NCBI RefSeq assembly: GCF_032191835.1
Contig: NC_083232.1
Span: 62,062,001 to 62,126,000 of the forward strand
Direction of reading: 5' to 3'
Length of the DNA: 64,000 nucleotides
Source: Heteronotia binoei
Lineage: Eukaryota
Numbering within the stretch: the stretch's first letter is position 1; every line of letters begins with the position of its first letter. Both the position numbers and the translations under genes were made by a program. A model generated the notes under the pieces. The model ran no database searches, was not told the origin of the DNA, and saw only the letters and a list, made by a program, of their open reading frames with translations. Below, piece after piece: positions 4,150 to 54,650 of this stretch.

Positions 4150-4797
4150 TTGGCAGAATGCATAGATTCCCATGGGGATGCACAGAGGAGGGAATCTCAT
4201 GTTTCCATTCCTTGTCTTCCTTTTGGGTCTGTTTTTGCCTACCCAGCAATTTGCAGGTTTCCCCCCTTTTCCCCTTTCTTCCACCAGCCCCCTATTTCTG
4301 TTTTTCCCCTGGTAGTCTGTACCCCCCCAATTCACTTACCCAACTTTTCTATGCCCCCCCGGTTGAAATAAAGAGTCAGAAACAATAACTGGATTAAACT
4401 AAGGGCCACTTTATTTAATTTATTAATAAACGGCAAGGGCTAAATGGAATCTGTGGCCTGGTCACGGCCAGGGGTCTCAACAGACACCTCCCCTGCCATT
4501 TAATGGGCGAGCAACCCAGCCCCTGGCTAGAGCCATACACCACAGCTCACACCAGGCCAGCTCAGTAAAAGGCCACAAACCAGGAAGGTCCAACCATGAG
4601 CCGGGCAACTCAATGAAAGGAACCTTCCAGGTAAGTCCCAAAGGACAGTCTGCATTCTCCCACCCCAGACCGGCAAACCCAAGGGTTGTTCCTGACAAAC
4701 CCCTAACCCCACAAAAGGGGGATGCTTTCTGGTCCTCCCCTAGTCGCATAAGCTCATTAACCACAGAAACCTGCCACCCCTAAGGCCAAGCCTCTGC

Positions 4798-5390
4798 TTA
4801 GGCCTTAGCACCCACTGGGAGACCCAAGGCCACCCACAGCCCTTGCCAAAGGTCTCCCAAGAAGAGATCATTACCCTCATCCGAAAGATGAATGCCATCA
4901 CCCCTATAGAGGTGGGGACAACTAATATGAATGTCCGGATGAGGCAAGTAGTAGCCCAAACTGTCTTCCAAGGCTCTCGGAATTATTTTATTAGCCTTGT
5001 GACAGGCCTGTCGATGCCCAAAGGGTCCCAAACACCATGCCAAAAAAGGCGGGGATCATGGCCAACCAAATTATAATGGTCCCAGGCCATCTCTCCTTGA
5101 TAGCCCTAAAATCCTCTTCTGCCTGCAGGACCAAAGCTGTGCCCTTCATCAGCCCAAGATCATTACCTCCCAGGTGTATAACTAAGACCTGGGGAGGAAG
5201 GCAAGCACTCCCTTGAAATAACAATGGCAACAGCCCAGGCCAATGAAGGCCCCTGGGTCCCCGCCATTCAATGGTAACCCACTGGCTGAGTTCCAGCTGA
5301 GCGCTGACTGAAGTTCTCCGAGCCTGATGAGCAGCCCAAAACACATAACTGTGTCCACAGATGAGAACAAGGCTCTTCTGGCCAGGAACA
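4798..5390 (-). pseudogene. SGNH/GDSL-like hydrolase ORF of the YR element (frameshifted)
   Basis: block I LICGHSYVFW, block III IHLGGNDLG, block V LYRGDGIHLS split across ORFs 4991..5344 and 4798..5043. Confidence 0.85.
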
Positions 5391-5462
5391 ACAGCATCTA
5401 AAAAGAAAAACAGTTAAACTAGCAACAATAACCACAAACTCCAATCTAAAACCCTCCATGAG

Positions 5463-5951
5463 CTAGGGACTGAGCAGGAGGCAAACATAGGCTTTATAAG
5501 CTGCTGAGTGCCAAAGGCCCAGATGCTGAACGGTCGAAGAAGGATAACCCAGGGTGGCAGCTGTAGAGGCCGCCCCAATTCTAATGGAGTGGGTACCAAA
5601 CCGCACCCCAGACAACCCGAGCTTAGCTAAAGCCCAAGTAGTCACAGCCCAAAATTGATGTTCTGTCAATGGACTGCCATTGACATGACAAAACAAAAAT
5701 CCCTCCCTAGGACCGCGTATTGCCAAATAGGCAGTCAGAGCAGAAACTGGACACAACTCCAGCTCAGAACATGTGCCCAGCTCCAAAACAGTTCCCTTGT
5801 GACGCTGGTCAGTCTTGGAGCGTCGAACGGTGATGACCGCCTTACTCTCAACTAACCTCAGATCCTGTAGTAACAAAGCACTACCAGAAACATCATTTCT
5901 GGAGTGTGCCACTAGCTCACTGACTCTAAGGGCCCCAAAGAAGGCAACCAA
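5463..5951 (-). pseudogene. Tyrosine recombinase, catalytic C-terminal domain (N-terminus deleted)
   Basis: FFGALRVSEL (R), RRSKTDQ (K), GTHSIRIGAAS (HxxR), LGLWHS (W), AYKAY (Y): lambda-integrase-fold catalytic residues. Confidence 0.9.
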
Positions 5952-5974
5952 GGAAGCAGCATGAAATAGTGTGG

Positions 5975-6152
5975 AATTCCAGAAGCCTCCTCCAGAGCCC
6001 TAAGCCTTTGCAAAATAGCAACATTTACCACCTCATCACCCTCCTCATCCGAAGATGATAAAGGGGGAGCTGGCCTCTTAGGCGGGGCCCTAGAAGCCTT
6101 AGGTATGGGATGTTTTCCCTTGGACTTCCCCATCCCTTTTTCCCCAGGCATT
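5975..6152 (-). pseudogene. N-terminal remnant of a gag-like ORF1 of the YR element
   Basis: MPGEKGMGKSKGKHPIPKASRAPPKRPAPPLSSSDEEGDEVVNVAILQRLRALEE: basic/Pro-rich start plus short coiled coil, then abrupt switch to YR sequence in another frame; gag assignment is inference from position. Confidence 0.5.
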
Positions 6153-7925
6153 TTAACAATACTGGCCTGAACTACTAAGAGCAAAAAACTGCCAAAAATT
6201 CCACTAAAATGGCCGCTCCTGCACAGTACCTAAAATGGCTGCCACCTTCTTCAGCAAGAAAGCCCCCAGGGACAATAGCAAAGCTGCAGCCAAAATGGCC
6301 CCTTCTCCACAGCTCCCAAAATGGCTGCCCTCTGATTCAAAAAGACAGCCACAAAGGGGACATAAAAATGGCTGCTGCAACACTATAGCTAAATTACCCC
6401 CCCCAAAAAAATTGGGGGGGGGGGGTAGAGGCCTTTCACATCACTCACTACCTGATCCAATACCAACAAGGGAAAAAGTGGCTTCCACAATACTGCCCCC
6501 ACACCCAATCCCCAGAGGAGTTTGCACTCCATGCTAGCAAAAAGCCTAATCCAAGAAACACCTTTTTAAAAAGAGGGGGGGGGAGAGGGGGAGGGAAGAA
6601 AGAAAGCTGGAAGAAAAGGGGAACTGACAAGACCAGAGACAGCAAGCAAAAATGCTCCTGCCCAGCCACTTAATCTTCACTTAAGGATCACCTAAGAAAC
6701 AACTGAAACTGATAAGATCTAAGCAGGAGCAAGCTAAAAGCTCTCCTGCCTAGACCAATCACCAGATGGAGACTGGCATGAGCGGGGAAGGCACGCTGCT
6801 GCTGCAGCCAGCCCCACCCCCAAGCACAAGCCCATTGGGTTGTCAATCTTCCTCTCTTCCCCCAAGGGTGGCAAATGTGTCCCTCTGTCCTTACAGTGAG
6901 GCTGCAGGTGTTTGGGACAAATTTCTCCCATCCTCAGTTTTGCCTTTTTACCTTTTCTGCCACTCCCTGCAACTTTATCTTCCCTTCTTCTATCTTTTGC
7001 TTTTTTTTTTTTATCTGTCTTTCTCCACACTGACAATAAGTGAGGCTTGGATTTTTTCTCTCCCACTTTTAACATTTTATATTTCCCTGCAAACCTAGGG
7101 CTTCCTTGGGTCTGTAGAAAAATACTCCTTGTCTGATCCTGGCTTCATTGTTGAGGTTTTTGGATTCCTGGTCTATGGCCCACTTCTGAGTAAGATATAA
7201 TGATGTTCCAAAAGACAAAGCCTGTGGGTTTAGAAGCTGAAACTGAGTGGAGTTACACAGACAGTTTTCTTTTCTTTTTTTGAAATCAAAGAAAGCACCT
7301 GGATCATAAAGCAATTCTGCAATAAAACCATGGGATATTTTTTTTTTTGTCTCAAATAATGGAACCCATCGGGGTCATTGAGGTAAAATACACTCCATGA
7401 GGTTTTTTATCCCTCTGTAGAGCCAGAAAAGTGTTGTTAATCTTTGTTAAGTTCTATGAGTTATTAAATATGTAAACAAGGAGGGAAAAATTCTAAAAAA
7501 ACCACTCTACCTCACATTAAAGTGTTATTATATAGGCTGTGGAACACCTTGGATTCTATCACCAAAACCAGGTTTATTTTATTTTATACTATCTTGAGAT
7601 GCATTGGAATTTGATTTGGGGTTTGTGAGTATACCCCAATTACAGATGTGTATATTATTTTCTGCTATGGGAAGCTTCTATTTGCACCATTGAGTAAATG
7701 TGCATATGTCCCATTGGTCAAGGGGTAATGCCTAGCTAGGACAATAACCAAGCTTTGTATTAGAGCAAGGAGAAGGTAGTGGCGGAATGGGTCTAAAAAT
7801 ATTGGTTGCCAGGAGACATAGGGGACCCACCCACAACTGTAAGGCTATCATTTAATTTTTGTAAGAAATAAATAAAAATTTTAAAAACACATAAGTGGAA
7901 AAAAGGTACAATTAAAGCTTTTGCG

Positions 7926-22914: not shown

Positions 22915-24493
22915 AAGAACATAAGAACTTAAGAGAAGCCATGTTGGATCATGTTGGATCAGGCCAACGGCCCATCCAGTCCAACACTCTGTTTTACACA
23001 GTGGCAAAAAAATTTATATATACACACACACTGTGGCTAATAGCCACTGATGGACCTCTGCTCCATATTTTTATCTAAACCCCTCTTGAAGGTGGCTATA
23101 CTTGTGGCCGCCACCACCTCCTGTGGCAGTGAATTCCACATGTTAATCACCCTTTGGGTGAAGAAGGTCCGGCCCCTTCCCAGCCGAGCCGGCTTGCCGG
23201 CGCTTAGGCTGGGGGCCGTCTTTGCCTCCCGGGTGTTTGTCTTGGGTGCGGGGTCCGCCTCCTCAGCACGCAGTTCCTTTTGGCTCTCTGCCCACCCACC
23301 CTTCCCTTTTGGCAGTACAGGCGTATGCCGGTCGCCTTATTAGGGGCCAGGTAGGAATTTTTTCACTTCCACACAATTGGCGCATGTGGGGGTGTTTTTT
23401 GCCTACCTTGTACTGCCTAGTAGGTTAGGATTTGTTAGGGGTATTTGTTATGGTCGCAGGCTGGAGGAGGTTTGGCCACAGGGTTTTCCAGGGGAGCACC
23501 TATGGCCTAGCACCGTTGGTGCGGTGGTCTGCAGGAACCGTAGATGGGCTACACGGCTCAGTGCGGGGAATGCAGATCACAGGGAGCCTCACCTGGGTGG
23601 ATCTTTCCATGGGGATTGATGCCAGCCCAGATGGTGATGGCTGGAGGCCTGGCCGCTCAGCTAAAACCCGAATACGGCGGGCTTGTGCTGGGGGCAGGGT
23701 GGCTTGCCCTTTGGACAAGGCGGGGTCCGGGGTTGACCCCAGGGCTTGTCTGGTTCAGGTTCTTTCACCCCCTGCCAGTTACAGTTGTTAATTATTAATA
23801 AAGCGGCCCGGTTTAAAACCCAACACTTGTGTCTGCCTCTTCATTCCGACTGGGGGGGCAAGTACTTCCCTCTATCCGTTTTAACCTGTCTGCGCAGCAA
23901 TTTCATCGAATGCCCACGAGTTCTTGTATTGTGAGAAAGGGAGAAAAGTACTTCTTTCTCTACTTTCTCCATCCCATGCATTATCTTGTAAACCTCTATC
24001 ATGTCACCCCACAGTCGATGTTTCTCCAAGCTAAAGAGTCCCAAGCGTTTCAACCTTTCTTCATAGGGAAAGTGCTCCAGCCCTTTAATCATTCTAGTTG
24101 CCCTTCTCTGGACTTTCTCCAATGCTATAATATCCTTTTTGAGGTGCGGCGACCAGAATTGCACACAGTACTCCAAATGAGACCGCACCATCGATTTATA
24201 CAGGGGCATTATGATACTGGCTGATTTGTTTTCAATTCCCTTCCTAATAATTCCCAGCATGGCGTTGGGAATTATTTTTTTTTTTATTGCAAACGCACAC
24301 TGTCTTGACATTTTCAGTGAGTTATCTACCACGACCCCAAGATCTCTCTCTTGGTCAGTCTCTGCCAGTTCACACCCCACCAACTTGTATTTGTAGCTGG
24401 GATTCTTGGCCCCAATGTGCATTACTTTGCACTTGGCCACATTGAACCACATCTGCCATGTTGACGCCCACTCACCCAGCCTCAACAGATCCC
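22915..24493 (-). mobile_element. 5'-truncated CR1 LINE interrupted by a 693-bp insertion
   Basis: AAGAACATAAGAAC tail; ORF 23841..24485 WQMWFNVAKCKVMH..ERDLGV..RSHLEYCVQFWSP. Confidence 0.92.
23167..23859 (+). mobile_element. ORF-less 693-bp insertion with a YR-element-like 3' terminus
   Basis: interrupts CR1 GGGTGAAG(AAG)TACTTCC; ends AATAAAGCGGCCC..CCAACACTTGTGTCTGCCTCTTCATTCC..GGGGGGC; CpG-rich. Confidence 0.7.
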
Positions 24494-24519
24494 TTAAGCA
24501 TGTTTAAGCATTTGAAGCA

Positions 24520-24948
24520 TGTTTGTTTCACGCTGCTCTGTTGTTAAGGGATCTGCAGCTATTTGCGGGTAAGGCAGTCATCACTGTCCGTCACTCTAAG
24601 ATGGATCAGTTGTAGAAGGGTATGGTGCTCAAGTTGGGTAGTTGTTCAGAGCTTGAGCTGTGTCCAGTTACTGCGCTGGCTGCTTATTTGGCAGTTAGGG
24701 GGCCCATGGAGCGGTTTTTGTTTATACATTCGAATGGTGGCCCGCTGACGAAGCATCGGTTTTGGGCAGTAATGTCACGGGCTTTGGGGGAGTTGGGGTT
24801 GTCTGGGGTGCGGTTTGGGACCCACTCCTTTAGAATTGGGGCAGCCTCAACAGCAGCTGTCATGGGGTATCCTTTCACTTCCATTCAGAGATTGGGCAGG
24901 TGGCATTCCTCGGCCTATAAGGCTTGCCTTTTATTAGGCCGTGAGTGA
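24520..24948 (+). pseudogene. Tyrosine recombinase C-terminal fragment
   Basis: RHSKMDQ, GTHSFRIGAAS, LGRWHSSAYKA; internal stop upstream of ORF 24622..24948. Confidence 0.88.
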
Positions 24949-25019
24949 CTTGGTGTCTCTTTATTGTTGGTTCTGTTCTTGTTTAACTGTTTTTTTCACT
25001 TTAGATGTTGTTGTTCCTG

Positions 25020-25607
25020 GCCAGAGGAGCCGAGTTCTCGTATGCAGCCATAGCCACATGTTTTGGGCCACTCATCAGGCTCAGAGAACTGCAGTTGGCT
25101 CTCAGCTGGGACTCAGCCACCATGTGTGTATCGAATGGCGGGGGTGCTGGGGCCTTCAGTGGCCAGGCCTGCTGCCTTTGTTGTTTAAACATTGTGTGGG
25201 TCCTCCTCCTCAGGATTTAATTGTTCACCTGGGAGGTAACGATCTGGGACTCTTAAAGGGCAAGGCCTTAGTTTGGCGGGCCCGGGAAGATTTCCAGCAC
25301 ATTCGGGAGCAATGGCCTGGGACCACCATAATTTGGTCAGCCATGCTGCCCCGCCTGGTGTGGCGTTGTGCTTGGGACCCTGCAGCTATAGAAAGGGCCC
25401 AGTAATAAGGCTAATAAGGAGATCAGGAAGGTGCTGGAAAAGAGGTTGGGCCACTATTTGCCCCATCCGGACATTTTGTTGAAATTTCCTGACCTCTACA
25501 GAGGGGATGGGGTCCATCTCTCGGAAAAGGGTAATATGCTTTTCCTGAGAGATTTGCAGCAAGGGTTGTGGGTGGCTTTGGGCCTCCCAGTGGGCACTAA
25601 GCCCTAA
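25020..25607 (+). pseudogene. SGNH-like hydrolase ORF (frameshifted)
   Basis: VCSHSHMFW, VHLGGNDLG, LYRGDGVHLS. Confidence 0.85.
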
Positions 25608-26049
25608 GTAGATACTTGGCCTTAGTAGTGGCAGGTTTTGGGGGTTTAGGGTACTATGCAGCATCCCCCTTTTGGGGAATTTGGGGTCTGGCATGATCAG
25701 CCTTCGGGTTTGAAGACCCGGGTTTGGAGAATACAGACTGTCTGGGAGGCTCGGCTAGAGGGTGCCTTTCTGGCGAGACGTGCGTCTGGGTTTGGGCCCT
25801 CTTTTGCGTGCCTCCCTGCTGGGCCTGCCTGGAGGGAGCTGAGTAACACTCAGCTATGGCTGGGGGGCTGGGTCTCTCTCCCGTTAATGGCAGGGGAGCG
25901 GTCGCAGTGACCCCTAGCCCTGGCCAGGCCACTGGTGGGGTACCCTTGCTGTTTATTAGAATATTGAATAAAGTGGCCCAATTTTATACCAATACTCTGT
26001 GTCTGACTCTTTATTCCATCCTTGGGGAGCAAAATGCTCTTCTAAGTTC

Positions 26050-52891: not shown

Positions 52892-52999
52892 TAAGAACAT
52901 AAGAACATAAGAGAAGCCATGTTAGATCAGGCCAATGGCCCATCCAGTCCAACATTCTGTGTCACACAGCGGCCAAATATATATATATATATATATATA
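52892..52999 (-). mobile_element. CR1 extreme 3' end (~110 bp)
   Basis: TAAGAACATAAGAACATAAGAG tail; flanked by ACTCA on both sides. Confidence 0.85.
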
Positions 53000-53174
53000 C
53001 ACTCAGATAAAAAGGTTTGCTCAATTTGTTAATTTTACTATTCTGTCATTATACCATTTTACATTCTAAACTACAGCCTACCAGATAATTTTACTTCACT
53101 GTCATTGGTTCTTAAATCTGTACCATGTTGCATACTGGGCCACTGCCTACCAGCTATGTATGGCTTTGCTCACT

Positions 53175-53320: not shown

Positions 53321-54304
53321 TAACCAGATTAGTAATGGAATCCCATTAACACACCTATGAGTCAGATCATTGGGCTGTCAAACCCAGTACTTTCTACTTT
53401 GACTAGCAGTAGTTCTGCAGTTCTTCTCAAGATGAGATATTTTTCATAACATGTTACCTGATCTTTTGAACTGCAGGTACCAAAGACTGACACTGACACC
53501 ATTTGGGTGCCAAACAGATGTTCTGTCCCTGAGCTATAACTCCAGTCCAACTTAACACTCTTGCGGAAGACTGTCTCAATGTTGGGGAAGACTGTCCCAA
53601 CCACAGAAACAGCCTTGTATTAGCTAAGATGAAAATGACACACAGAGCAGGGTTTCAGATTATATCTGCAGCATCTGGGCAGGTTTATGTGGGAGAATAG
53701 CTAGACTGTTGACTTGATTTTGTTTCTTTTTCCCTATTCTATTTCAAGATGATAGCATCTATGTGTCAGAAAAATTATGGACTCATAGAAAGAAATGCAC
53801 TTACCCACCAGAAGTGGACACTGAAACAAAGAGCTATTTTAGATGTGCCCAAGGAGTTGCAGAGGTGTGTTTTTTTTAACTTTCCCCCTGATTTGCTAAA
53901 ATGCAAAAGTTTTAGTGGACATATGGGGCATCCATACATATGAGACTGTCTCACTTTAATGGCAAGCTGAAGGTCAATATCTATGGTTAGTGTCAGAAGC
54001 ACATCCCAGTGCCCTGCACTGACAGATCTACATAATGTTCTACCAATAGTTGAGTATCCACCATAATATAACCACTTATTTTTGGCTGCTGGGAATAGGG
54101 CCAACAGATATTAATTGGCTTGCCAAACCAAACTGGAAACCAAAGGACATATATTCTTCTAATCTAACATTTTTATTTATTTATGCTCCTTTATTCATAC
54201 CCCATACCCATATAGTGCAGGAAACTACTAGTTTTCCACTGGTGGTAGACAACCCTGTAAATGTGGGCAATGACACTTCCCTCCAAGGAACTACATGCTT
54301 CATT

Positions 54305-54650
54305 TAATTGTGAGAAAGGGAGAAAAGTACTTCTTTCTCTACCTTCTCTATCCCATTCATAATCCTGTAAACCTCTATCATGTCACCCCTCAGTCGACGT
54401 TTCTCCAATCTAAGGAGCCCCAAGCGTTTTAACCTTTCTTCATAGGGAAAGTGTTCCAACCCTTTAATCATTCTAGTTGCCCTTTTCTGCACTTTTTCCA
54501 ATGCTATAATATCCTTTTTGAGGTGCGGGGACCAGAATTGCACACAGTATTCCATATGAGACCGCACCATCGATTTATACAGGGGCGTTATGATACTAGC
54601 TGATTTGTTTTAAATTCCTTTCCTAATAATTCCCAGCATGGCGTTTGCCT
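54305..54650 (-). mobile_element. CR1 RT fragment
   Basis: MVRSHMEYCVQFWSPHLKKDIIALEKVQKRATRMIKGLEH. Confidence 0.9.

What the first reader, a model, noticed from the sequence alone, without database searches (positions are those of the whole stretch)
4352..6700. RT-less tyrosine recombinase + SGNH hydrolase element
Seen: a minus-strand YR domain retaining R-K-HxxR-W-Y, followed directly by an SGNH hydrolase with all catalytic blocks (GHS, GGND, DGIH), and no RT/RNase H anywhere in the element. Known: Ngaro-group DIRS retroelements can encode an SGNH hydrolase after YR, and its role is unclear. Inference: this is either a one-off deletion, or a family that moves as a YR+SGNH module, mobilised in trans or by YR-mediated DNA circles. 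A second diverged copy in this window (24500-26030) keeps the same two genes, which makes the family option worth testing.
Basis: partly seen in the sequence, partly recalled or inferred. Interest (0 to 1): 0.75.

Follow-up and report, generated by a model that had tools for sequence, protein, structure and literature searches.

The report
Two dead Ngaro retrotransposon remnants
These are two old, broken leftovers of an ordinary gecko-type Ngaro retrotransposon, one with its middle deleted and one with its front cut off; the breakpoints differ and the recombinase is incomplete, so they are not a new mobile unit.

Summary
On the minus strand, 5978-5466 encodes the C-terminal catalytic half of a tyrosine recombinase (YR), and 5397-4801 encodes an SGNH hydrolase with all its catalytic blocks. 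No RT or RNase H was found. A gag|YR junction lies at about 5972-5978.

The self-mobile "RT-less YR+SGNH family" reading is not supported:
- **Copy 1** is an internally deleted Ngaro. Gag codons 1-59 are joined out of frame to YR codon ~138. The YR lacks its N-terminal ~135 residues and has no ATG. The SGNH has two 1-nt frameshifts.
- **Copy 2** (24511-26031) keeps 4-5 YR codons that lie 5' of copy 1's junction. It has no gag and abuts the truncated end of a CR1-like LINE, so the two breakpoints differ.
- **Divergence.** The copies are about 70% identical. dN/dS is about 0.19 and dS about 1 or more, so most of their divergence arose in functional, presumably full-length, ancestors.
- **Relatives.** A Heteronotia binoei Gag/SGNH gene model is as close to each copy as the copies are to each other.

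Trans-mobilisation of copy 1's deleted form cannot be excluded. A 696-bp ORF-less element with the same 3' terminus has clearly transposed nearby. That would still be an ordinary non-autonomous derivative. This scan had already noted SGNH-carrying Ngaro elements elsewhere in this genome.

The parts
6193..6357 (-). 5' untranslated region of copy 1: an 86-bp tandem duplication carrying repeated GCCATTTT motifs, just upstream of the Gag ATG. Possibly promoter or leader. The true 5' end of the element was not found.
   Evidence: The role is inferred only.
5972..6151 (-). Gag codons 1-59 of copy 1, with ATG at 6151. The ORF then runs on for 19 unrelated codons, read from the YR region in the wrong frame, to a stop at 5914-5912.
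   Evidence: tblastn of P0033 residues 1-59: 63% identity, E 1.7e-10. P0037 and P0044 also match. ORF.
5972..5981 (-). Internal deletion junction. Gag codon 59 is joined out of frame to YR codon ~138. The rest of gag, RT, RNase H and YR residues 1-~137 are missing.
5466..5978 (-). YR C-terminal catalytic domain of copy 1 (profile positions 135-300 of 305). It is open but has no ATG. Stop at 5465-5463.
5398..5410 (-). Canonical 3' splice site (tttttctttttAG|AT) in front of the SGNH exon. It is conserved in copy 2 at 24991-25004.
   Evidence: The Gag/SGNH fusion models P0033 and P0037 begin their SGNH part at this point.
4801..5397 (-). SGNH hydrolase exon of copy 1: GHS at 5356-5348, GGND at 5170-5159, DGIH at 4899-4888. 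It is broken by two 1-nt deletions near 5050 and 5006. Stop at 4800-4798.
   Evidence: (table 4)
4349..4800 (-). 3' untranslated region and 3' terminus of copy 1. AATAAA lies about 60 nt before the end, and the terminal motif is CTCTTTATTTCAACCGGGGGGGCA.
24511..24945 (+). YR remnant of copy 2. It starts at profile position ~134 (FEACLFHAA), has a 23-codon deletion that removes the first catalytic Arg, and has an internal stop at 24613-24615.
25005..25607 (+). SGNH exon of copy 2, with at least one frameshift (near 25366) and an internal stop.
25608..26031 (+). 3' region and terminus of copy 2, homologous to copy 1's.
22919..24495 (-). 5'-truncated CR1-like LINE (open RT C-terminal region on the minus strand). 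Its truncated end abuts copy 2's 5' boundary. It is not part of the Ngaro element but defines that boundary.
23165..23860 (+). 696-bp ORF-less element nested in the LINE. Its last ~190 bp match the 3' terminus of copy 1 and its last ~75 bp that of copy 2. It has AAG at both ends, and the empty site is visible in the paralogous LINE copy at about 655-670.

Best explanation
Both stretches are dead remnants of SGNH-carrying Ngaro (DIRS-order) tyrosine-recombinase retrotransposons of a gecko-type genome. They come from two long-diverged sublineages and were damaged independently.

- **Copy 1 (about 6357-4349, minus strand)** is an internally deleted element. It keeps its leader and Gag codons 1-59. 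It has lost the rest of gag, RT, RNase H and the N-terminal ~137 residues of YR. It resumes out of frame in the YR catalytic domain and continues through the SGNH exon to the normal 3' terminus.
- **Copy 2 (24511-26031, plus strand)** is a 5'-truncated element. It begins 4-5 codons earlier in YR, directly against the 5'-truncated end of a CR1-like LINE.
- **Neither copy can make a recombinase.** There is no N-terminal domain and no start codon, and copy 2 also lacks the first catalytic Arg.
- **Neither copy can make the esterase.** The SGNH is frameshifted. In copy 1 the usual Gag splice donor region, around codon 125, is also deleted.
- **The deletion mechanism is inferred.** Template switching during reverse transcription or a later genomic deletion could each explain copy 1's junction. 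The junction is not at canonical splice sites.
For: - **YR extent.** The YR matches only profile positions 135-300, and no N-terminal YR match occurs anywhere in the 64 kb.
- **Gag.** Gag 1-59 was identified by 63% identity to the N-terminus of XP_060111014.1 (P0033), a Heteronotia binoei Gag/SGNH model.
- **Frames.** Gag and YR are in different frames, and the YR piece has no Met.
- **SGNH damage.** Two 1-nt deletions in copy 1's SGNH are absent from most related contigs (table 4).
- **Copy 2 boundary.** Copy 2 retains FEAC upstream of copy 1's junction and is bounded by a LINE RT C-terminus on the other strand.
- **Independent insertions.** The flanks of the two copies are unrelated.
- **Divergence.** dN/dS is 0.15-0.27 with dS 1.0-1.4 between the copies.
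- **Tree.** In the SGNH tree, c1, c2 and P0033 form an unresolved trio. Path lengths are c1-P0033 0.62, c2-P0033 0.59 and c1-c2 0.75.
- **No RT/RNase H.** No Pfam hits upstream of either copy.
- **Known architecture.** Ngaro with an SGNH ORF after YR is described in PMC9210276.
Against: - The two 5' boundaries fall within about 15 nt of each other in YR coordinates. That is roughly a 7% coincidence if both breaks must lie between RT and the YR catalytic box. It could hint at a shared cause.
- Copy 1 keeps both ends that a trans-mobilised derivative would need, and it has few disabling mutations. The deletion may therefore predate insertion.
- No full-length reference DNA could be fetched. The size of the deletion (about 3-3.5 kb) and the exact position of the Gag splice donor are inferred from protein models.
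- No split direct repeats were found in copy 1.
Confidence: 0.8

Rival explanations
1. Copy 1 belongs to a non-autonomous Ngaro deletion family. The Gag-59|YR-138 deletion arose once in an RNA or cDNA, and the short element was then copied many times by RT and YR supplied in trans by full-length Ngaro elements.
For: - Copy 1 keeps the leader with the Gag start and the complete 3' end.
- It carries only two frameshifts and no stops in about 450 coding codons.
- A 696-bp ORF-less element with the same 3' terminus inserted cleanly into a LINE nearby, so trans-mobilisation of short derivatives does occur here.
- DIRS-1 proteins act in trans on truncated elements (PMC7192593).
- First-stage notes s1-328442 and s1-333730 report non-autonomous Ngaro elements elsewhere in this genome. 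These notes are unchecked.
Against: - No second copy with this junction is in the window.
- Copy 2 has a different breakpoint.
- One ~83%-similar paralogous contig, seen in two runs, stops matching at 5935 and runs on for 81-91 nt of unlike sequence instead of into gag (records 8 and 32). This is weak evidence.
- No terminal split repeats were found.
Confidence: 0.12
2. This is a self-mobile YR+SGNH DNA module, Crypton-like. Its own recombinase excises and integrates it as a DNA circle without reverse transcription.
For: The YR catalytic motifs are all present in copy 1. The element's relatives insert at an AAG trinucleotide without a target duplication, as YR elements do.
Against: - The YR lacks its whole N-terminal domain and any ATG, and it is out of frame with Gag.
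- Copy 2 lacks the first catalytic Arg.
- The SGNH has no start codon and depends on a Gag splice donor that is deleted here.
- The two copies do not share a 5' end.
- An AATAAA signal and a retroelement-type 3' end are retained.
Confidence: 0.02
3. There is a recurrent breakpoint. The boundary between the N-terminal and catalytic YR domains (codons ~133-138) is a hot spot. It could be a pause or template-switch site for RT. It could also be an internal AAG pseudo-crossover site (TTTGAAGCA in copy 2) used by the recombinase. Independent events would then give similar truncated products.
For: The two independent boundaries lie about 15 nt apart. Copy 2's boundary sits in a triple AAGCATGTTT-like repeat, and AAG is the crossover trinucleotide of the nested mini-element.
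Against:
- Copy 1's junction partner in Gag has no AAG.
- Copy 2's boundary is equally well explained by the LINE's own 5' truncation or by a later deletion.
Confidence: 0.05

Closest known systems
Ngaro-like retrotransposons with an SGNH hydrolase ORF (DIRS order; Goodwin and Poulter 2004; e.g. DIRS-53_XT and DIRS-54_XT of Xenopus, PMC9210276)
   Same: Both have a Gag start, a YR followed directly by an SGNH hydrolase, a retroelement-type 3' end, and insertion at a trinucleotide without a target duplication (seen in the related mini-element). The closest proteins are gecko 'integrase/recombinase xerD homolog' and Gag/SGNH gene models.
   Different: These two copies lack RT/RNase H, most of gag and the N-terminal YR domain. 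No split direct repeats (A1 ... B1 A2 B2) could be found. Both are pseudogenes.
Non-autonomous or internally deleted derivatives of YR retrotransposons (e.g. truncated DIRS-1 mobilised in trans, PMC7192593)
   Same: Copy 1 keeps the 5' leader and 3' end but has lost the enzymes. A short ORF-less relative has clearly transposed in this window.
   Different: Mobility of copy 1's deleted form is not shown. No second copy with its junction was seen.
Crypton DNA transposons (YR only, no RT; PMC3212892)
   Same: A YR domain is present without RT.
   Different: The YR here is a fragment of a Ngaro YR, 50-62% identical to gecko and lizard Ngaro-type YR proteins. It is preceded by a Ngaro Gag start and followed by the Ngaro SGNH exon and 3' end. 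It is not an intact YR gene.

Membership tests
Ngaro (DIRS-order YR retrotransposon) | Tyrosine recombinase with R-K-HxxR-(H/W)-Y catalytic residues | tested here: met
   In copy 1 all motifs are present in the C-terminal domain, and Pfam PF00589 scores above its cut-off. The N-terminal domain is absent. Copy 2 lacks the first Arg.
Ngaro (DIRS-order YR retrotransposon) | Reverse transcriptase and RNase H ORF between gag and YR | tested here: not met
   Gag codon 59 abuts YR codon ~138 directly. No Pfam RT/RNase H hit upstream of either copy. The copies are therefore deletion and truncation derivatives, not complete members.
Ngaro (DIRS-order YR retrotransposon) | Gag-like ORF1 | tested here: met
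   Only the first 59 codons are present, in copy 1. They are 63% identical to the N-terminus of the gecko Gag/SGNH model P0033. Copy 2 has none.
Ngaro (DIRS-order YR retrotransposon) | SGNH hydrolase ORF after YR (vertebrate Ngaro subgroup) | tested here: met
   Blocks GHS, GGND and DGIH are present. The reading frames are broken.
Ngaro (DIRS-order YR retrotransposon) | Split direct repeats A1 ... B1 A2 B2 | tested here: not met
   No direct repeat links the 5' region (6152-7400) to the 3' region (4349-4800) of copy 1, and none is found within copy 2. The 5' end of copy 1 was not located, so loss or decay of A1 cannot be told apart from true absence.
Ngaro (DIRS-order YR retrotransposon) | Insertion without target duplication at a short trinucleotide shared by element and target | tested here: inconclusive
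   This is seen for the related 696-bp mini-element: AAG at both ends, with the empty site in the paralogous LINE copy. No empty site is available for copy 1 or copy 2.
Crypton (YR DNA transposon) | Complete YR gene as the only enzyme, with its own start and N-terminal domain | tested here: not met
   The YR is truncated at profile position 135, has no ATG and is out of frame with Gag.

The most novel reading that the evidence does not exclude
Copy 1 represents a propagating RT-less Ngaro deletion family (leader, Gag start, YR C-terminus, SGNH, 3' end) that is mobilised in trans. The YR interdomain boundary (codons ~133-138) would be a recurrent breakpoint at which such subgenomic derivatives form.
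Probability: 0.1. Interest if true: 0.35.

Novelty: already known. Interest (0 to 1): 0.12.

Why it matters
It matters little. The result removes a candidate for a new kind of mobile element. The YR+SGNH pair without RT is what remains when an ordinary SGNH-carrying Ngaro retrotransposon loses its middle or its front.

Two minor points are of use for annotating squamate genomes:
- The remnants keep the conserved 3' splice site in front of the SGNH exon.
- They share a conserved 3' end with a 696-bp ORF-less derivative that has clearly transposed.

Tried and rejected
- **The look-up of encoding contigs was closed.** No full-length Ngaro DNA from gecko genomes could be fetched. As a result there was no DNA-level reference for the deletion end points or for the split repeats.
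- **No Ngaro RT protein was obtained.** The long proteins among the SGNH hits carry cold-shock (CSDE1/CSD), transposase HTH or unrelated domains, not RT. Absence of RT therefore rests on the direct Gag|YR junction and on Pfam scans of open pieces.
- **The Gag N-terminus search found only the query.** Searching P0033 residues 1-60 in the large protein collection returned only P0033 itself.
- **The sequencing runs were too limited.** They were four small restriction-site-type DNA runs of one study. Laid on 4300-6800, they gave many diverged SGNH contigs but no usable bridge or loose end at the junction. Depth differences follow restriction sites and say nothing about copy number.
- **Splicing origin of the Gag|YR junction was rejected.** No GT can follow Gag codon 59, because Pro 59 is conserved in P0033. 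Copy 1 also still contains YR sequence that the predicted Gag-to-SGNH intron would remove.
- **Segmental duplication of one insertion was rejected.** The flanks are unrelated and dS is about 1 or more.
- Coordinates were worked out from earlier outputs instead.
- **Literature searches found nothing relevant.** They turned up no paper on RT-less Ngaro families or on Gag/esterase splicing.
Full report
**What is there**

The window is vertebrate DNA. The best protein matches of the recombinase piece are gecko and lizard proteins: Heteronotia binoei, Pogona and Phrynocephalus 'integrase/recombinase xerD homolog', 50-62% identical.

On the minus strand the open piece 5999-5466 matches Pfam Phage_integrase (E 6e-8). 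It also matches a profile I built from 14 full-length (292-305 aa) relatives at E 8.5e-74. The match covers only profile positions 135-300. tblastn with the full-length proteins likewise starts at their residue ~134 (nt 5981).

Downstream, after the YR stop at 5465-5463, comes a canonical 3' splice site (tttttctttttAG|AT, AG at 5399-5398). The SGNH exon follows at 5397-4801, with GHS, GGND and DGIH. It matches Lipase_GDSL_2 and 823 proteins of the representative library.

The SGNH reading frame changes twice, near 5050 and near 5006. Contigs of related copies from four public runs mostly carry one extra base at each of these two places. These are therefore 1-nt deletions private to this copy (table 4).

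**The 5' side of copy 1**

The ORF starting at ATG 6151 is the beginning of a Ngaro Gag. Residues 1-59 of P0033 align to 6151-5972 at 63% identity. P0037 and P0044 align more weakly.

P0033 is XP_060111014.1 of Heteronotia binoei. P0037 comes from Eublepharis macularius. In both models an N-terminal Gag part of ~126-140 residues is joined to the SGNH domain exactly where the splice acceptor lies here.

In copy 1, Gag homology ends at the conserved ASG(I/V)P (nt ~5972). YR homology begins at LFHAA a few bases further on, in a different frame. Everything between Gag codon 59 and YR codon ~138 is missing. That includes the rest of gag, RT, RNase H and the N-terminal YR domain.

Further points on this side:
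- The 178-codon YR piece contains no Met.
- The Gag ORF runs on for 19 out-of-frame codons to a stop at 5914-5912.
- Ten open pieces upstream, out to 9361, have no Pfam RT/RNase H hit.
- No N-terminal YR match exists anywhere in the 64 kb.
- The junction is not at canonical splice sites. The Pro codon after which it lies is conserved in P0033, so no GT can follow it.

**Copy 2**

On the plus strand, 24534-26027 aligns to 5880-4355 of copy 1 at 70% identity.

- Its YR begins at 24511 with FEACLFHAA (profile ~134). It then has a 23-codon deletion that removes the first catalytic Arg, and a stop at 24613.
- The splice acceptor (24991-25004) and the SGNH exon (25005-25607) are present, but the exon is frameshifted and has a stop.
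- It keeps 4-5 YR codons (FEAC.) that lie 5' of copy 1's junction, and it has no gag.
- Directly upstream, 22919-24495 is a CR1-like LINE on the minus strand. Its open RT C-terminal region ends, 5'-truncated, at the Ngaro boundary. The LINE does not continue beyond copy 2.
- The flanks of the two copies are unrelated.

The two copies are therefore independent insertions with different 5' breakpoints.

**Selection and relationships**

Between the copies, dN/dS is 0.15 for YR and 0.21-0.27 for SGNH. dS is 1.0-1.4. Most of their divergence thus accumulated while both genes were under purifying selection, that is, in functional ancestors.

Neither truncated form can express its YR, so the simplest reading is descent from two diverged full-length sublineages. 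In an SGNH tree, c1, c2 and P0033 form a supported group (SH-aLRT 93) that is internally unresolved. P0033 is slightly closer to each copy than the copies are to each other. The two copies are therefore not an exclusive lineage of their own.

**Ends of the element**

The last ~140 bp are conserved among copy 1, copy 2 and a 696-bp ORF-less element at 23165-23860. This stretch contains AATAAAG.GGCCC and the terminal CTCTTyATTyC..GGGGGGGCA.

The mini-element sits inside the LINE. The paralogous LINE copy at 655-670 shows the empty site (gtgaag|tactt), and AAG flanks the insertion on both sides. This is the trinucleotide-crossover pattern proposed for DIRS-type YR integration (PMC7192593). Short derivatives of this element group have therefore moved, presumably in trans.

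No split direct repeats were found in copy 1 or copy 2. The true 5' end of copy 1 was not located. The region upstream of Gag holds an 86-bp tandem duplication with repeated GCCATTTT motifs.

**Interpretation**

The best explanation (about 0.8) is two ordinary dead Ngaro remnants, one internal deletion and one 5' truncation.

Trans-mobilisation of copy 1's deleted form remains possible (about 0.12). It keeps both ends and is only lightly damaged. Even so, it would be an ordinary non-autonomous derivative.

A self-mobile YR+SGNH DNA module is very unlikely (about 0.02), because the YR is incomplete and has no start.

The nearness of the two 5' boundaries (about 15 nt) is noted. It is roughly a 7% coincidence once one allows that both were picked for keeping the YR catalytic domain without RT. 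A breakpoint hot spot gets about 0.05.

**Limits**

- No Ngaro RT protein was obtained.
- The public runs were small restriction-site libraries that could not test the junction genome-wide.
- Earlier notes of this scan already describe SGNH-carrying Ngaro elements, a proposed Gag-to-esterase splice and non-autonomous Ngaro copies on other pieces of this genome. I checked only the parts visible here: the acceptor site, the Gag/SGNH models and the mini-element.

Noticed in passing
window 23165-23860: A 696-bp ORF-less element is inserted cleanly into a CR1-like LINE. AAG lies at both ends, and the empty site is visible in the paralogous LINE copy at about 655-670. Its 3' ~190 bp match the Ngaro 3' terminus of copy 1. 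It is probably a trans-mobilised short Ngaro derivative or a solo repeat unit. It is also noted as s1-335974.
   Followed up: partly
window 22919-24495 (minus strand); also 414-781, 52892-53003 and 54259-54645: These are copies of a CR1-like LINE. The copy at 22919-24495 has a long open RT C-terminal reading frame and an ACATAAGA-type repeat at its 3' end.
   Followed up: partly
window 5398-5410 and 24991-25004: A polypyrimidine tract plus AG lies directly before the SGNH exon and is conserved in both diverged copies. It coincides with the point where gecko gene models (P0033, P0037) join a Gag N-terminus to SGNH. This fits the Gag-to-esterase splice proposed in earlier notes of this scan.
   Followed up: partly
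window 6193-6357: An 86-bp tandem duplication lies upstream of the Gag ATG. It carries four to five GCCATTTT motifs, which resemble YY1 sites. It may be the element's promoter or leader.
   Followed up: no
proteins P0096, P0077, P0136, P0117: Long proteins (1100-1500 aa) in the library combine CSDE1-type cold-shock domains with a C-terminal SGNH domain related to the Ngaro esterase. Their origin, host gene or LINE-type ORF1, is unknown.
   Followed up: no
window 4349-4797 versus 25608-26031: The non-coding 3' region is about as conserved between the two copies (~70%) as the coding parts, although synonymous sites are saturated. This suggests constraint on the 3' RNA or DNA, in line with the earlier notes on a folded 3' element.
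   Followed up: no
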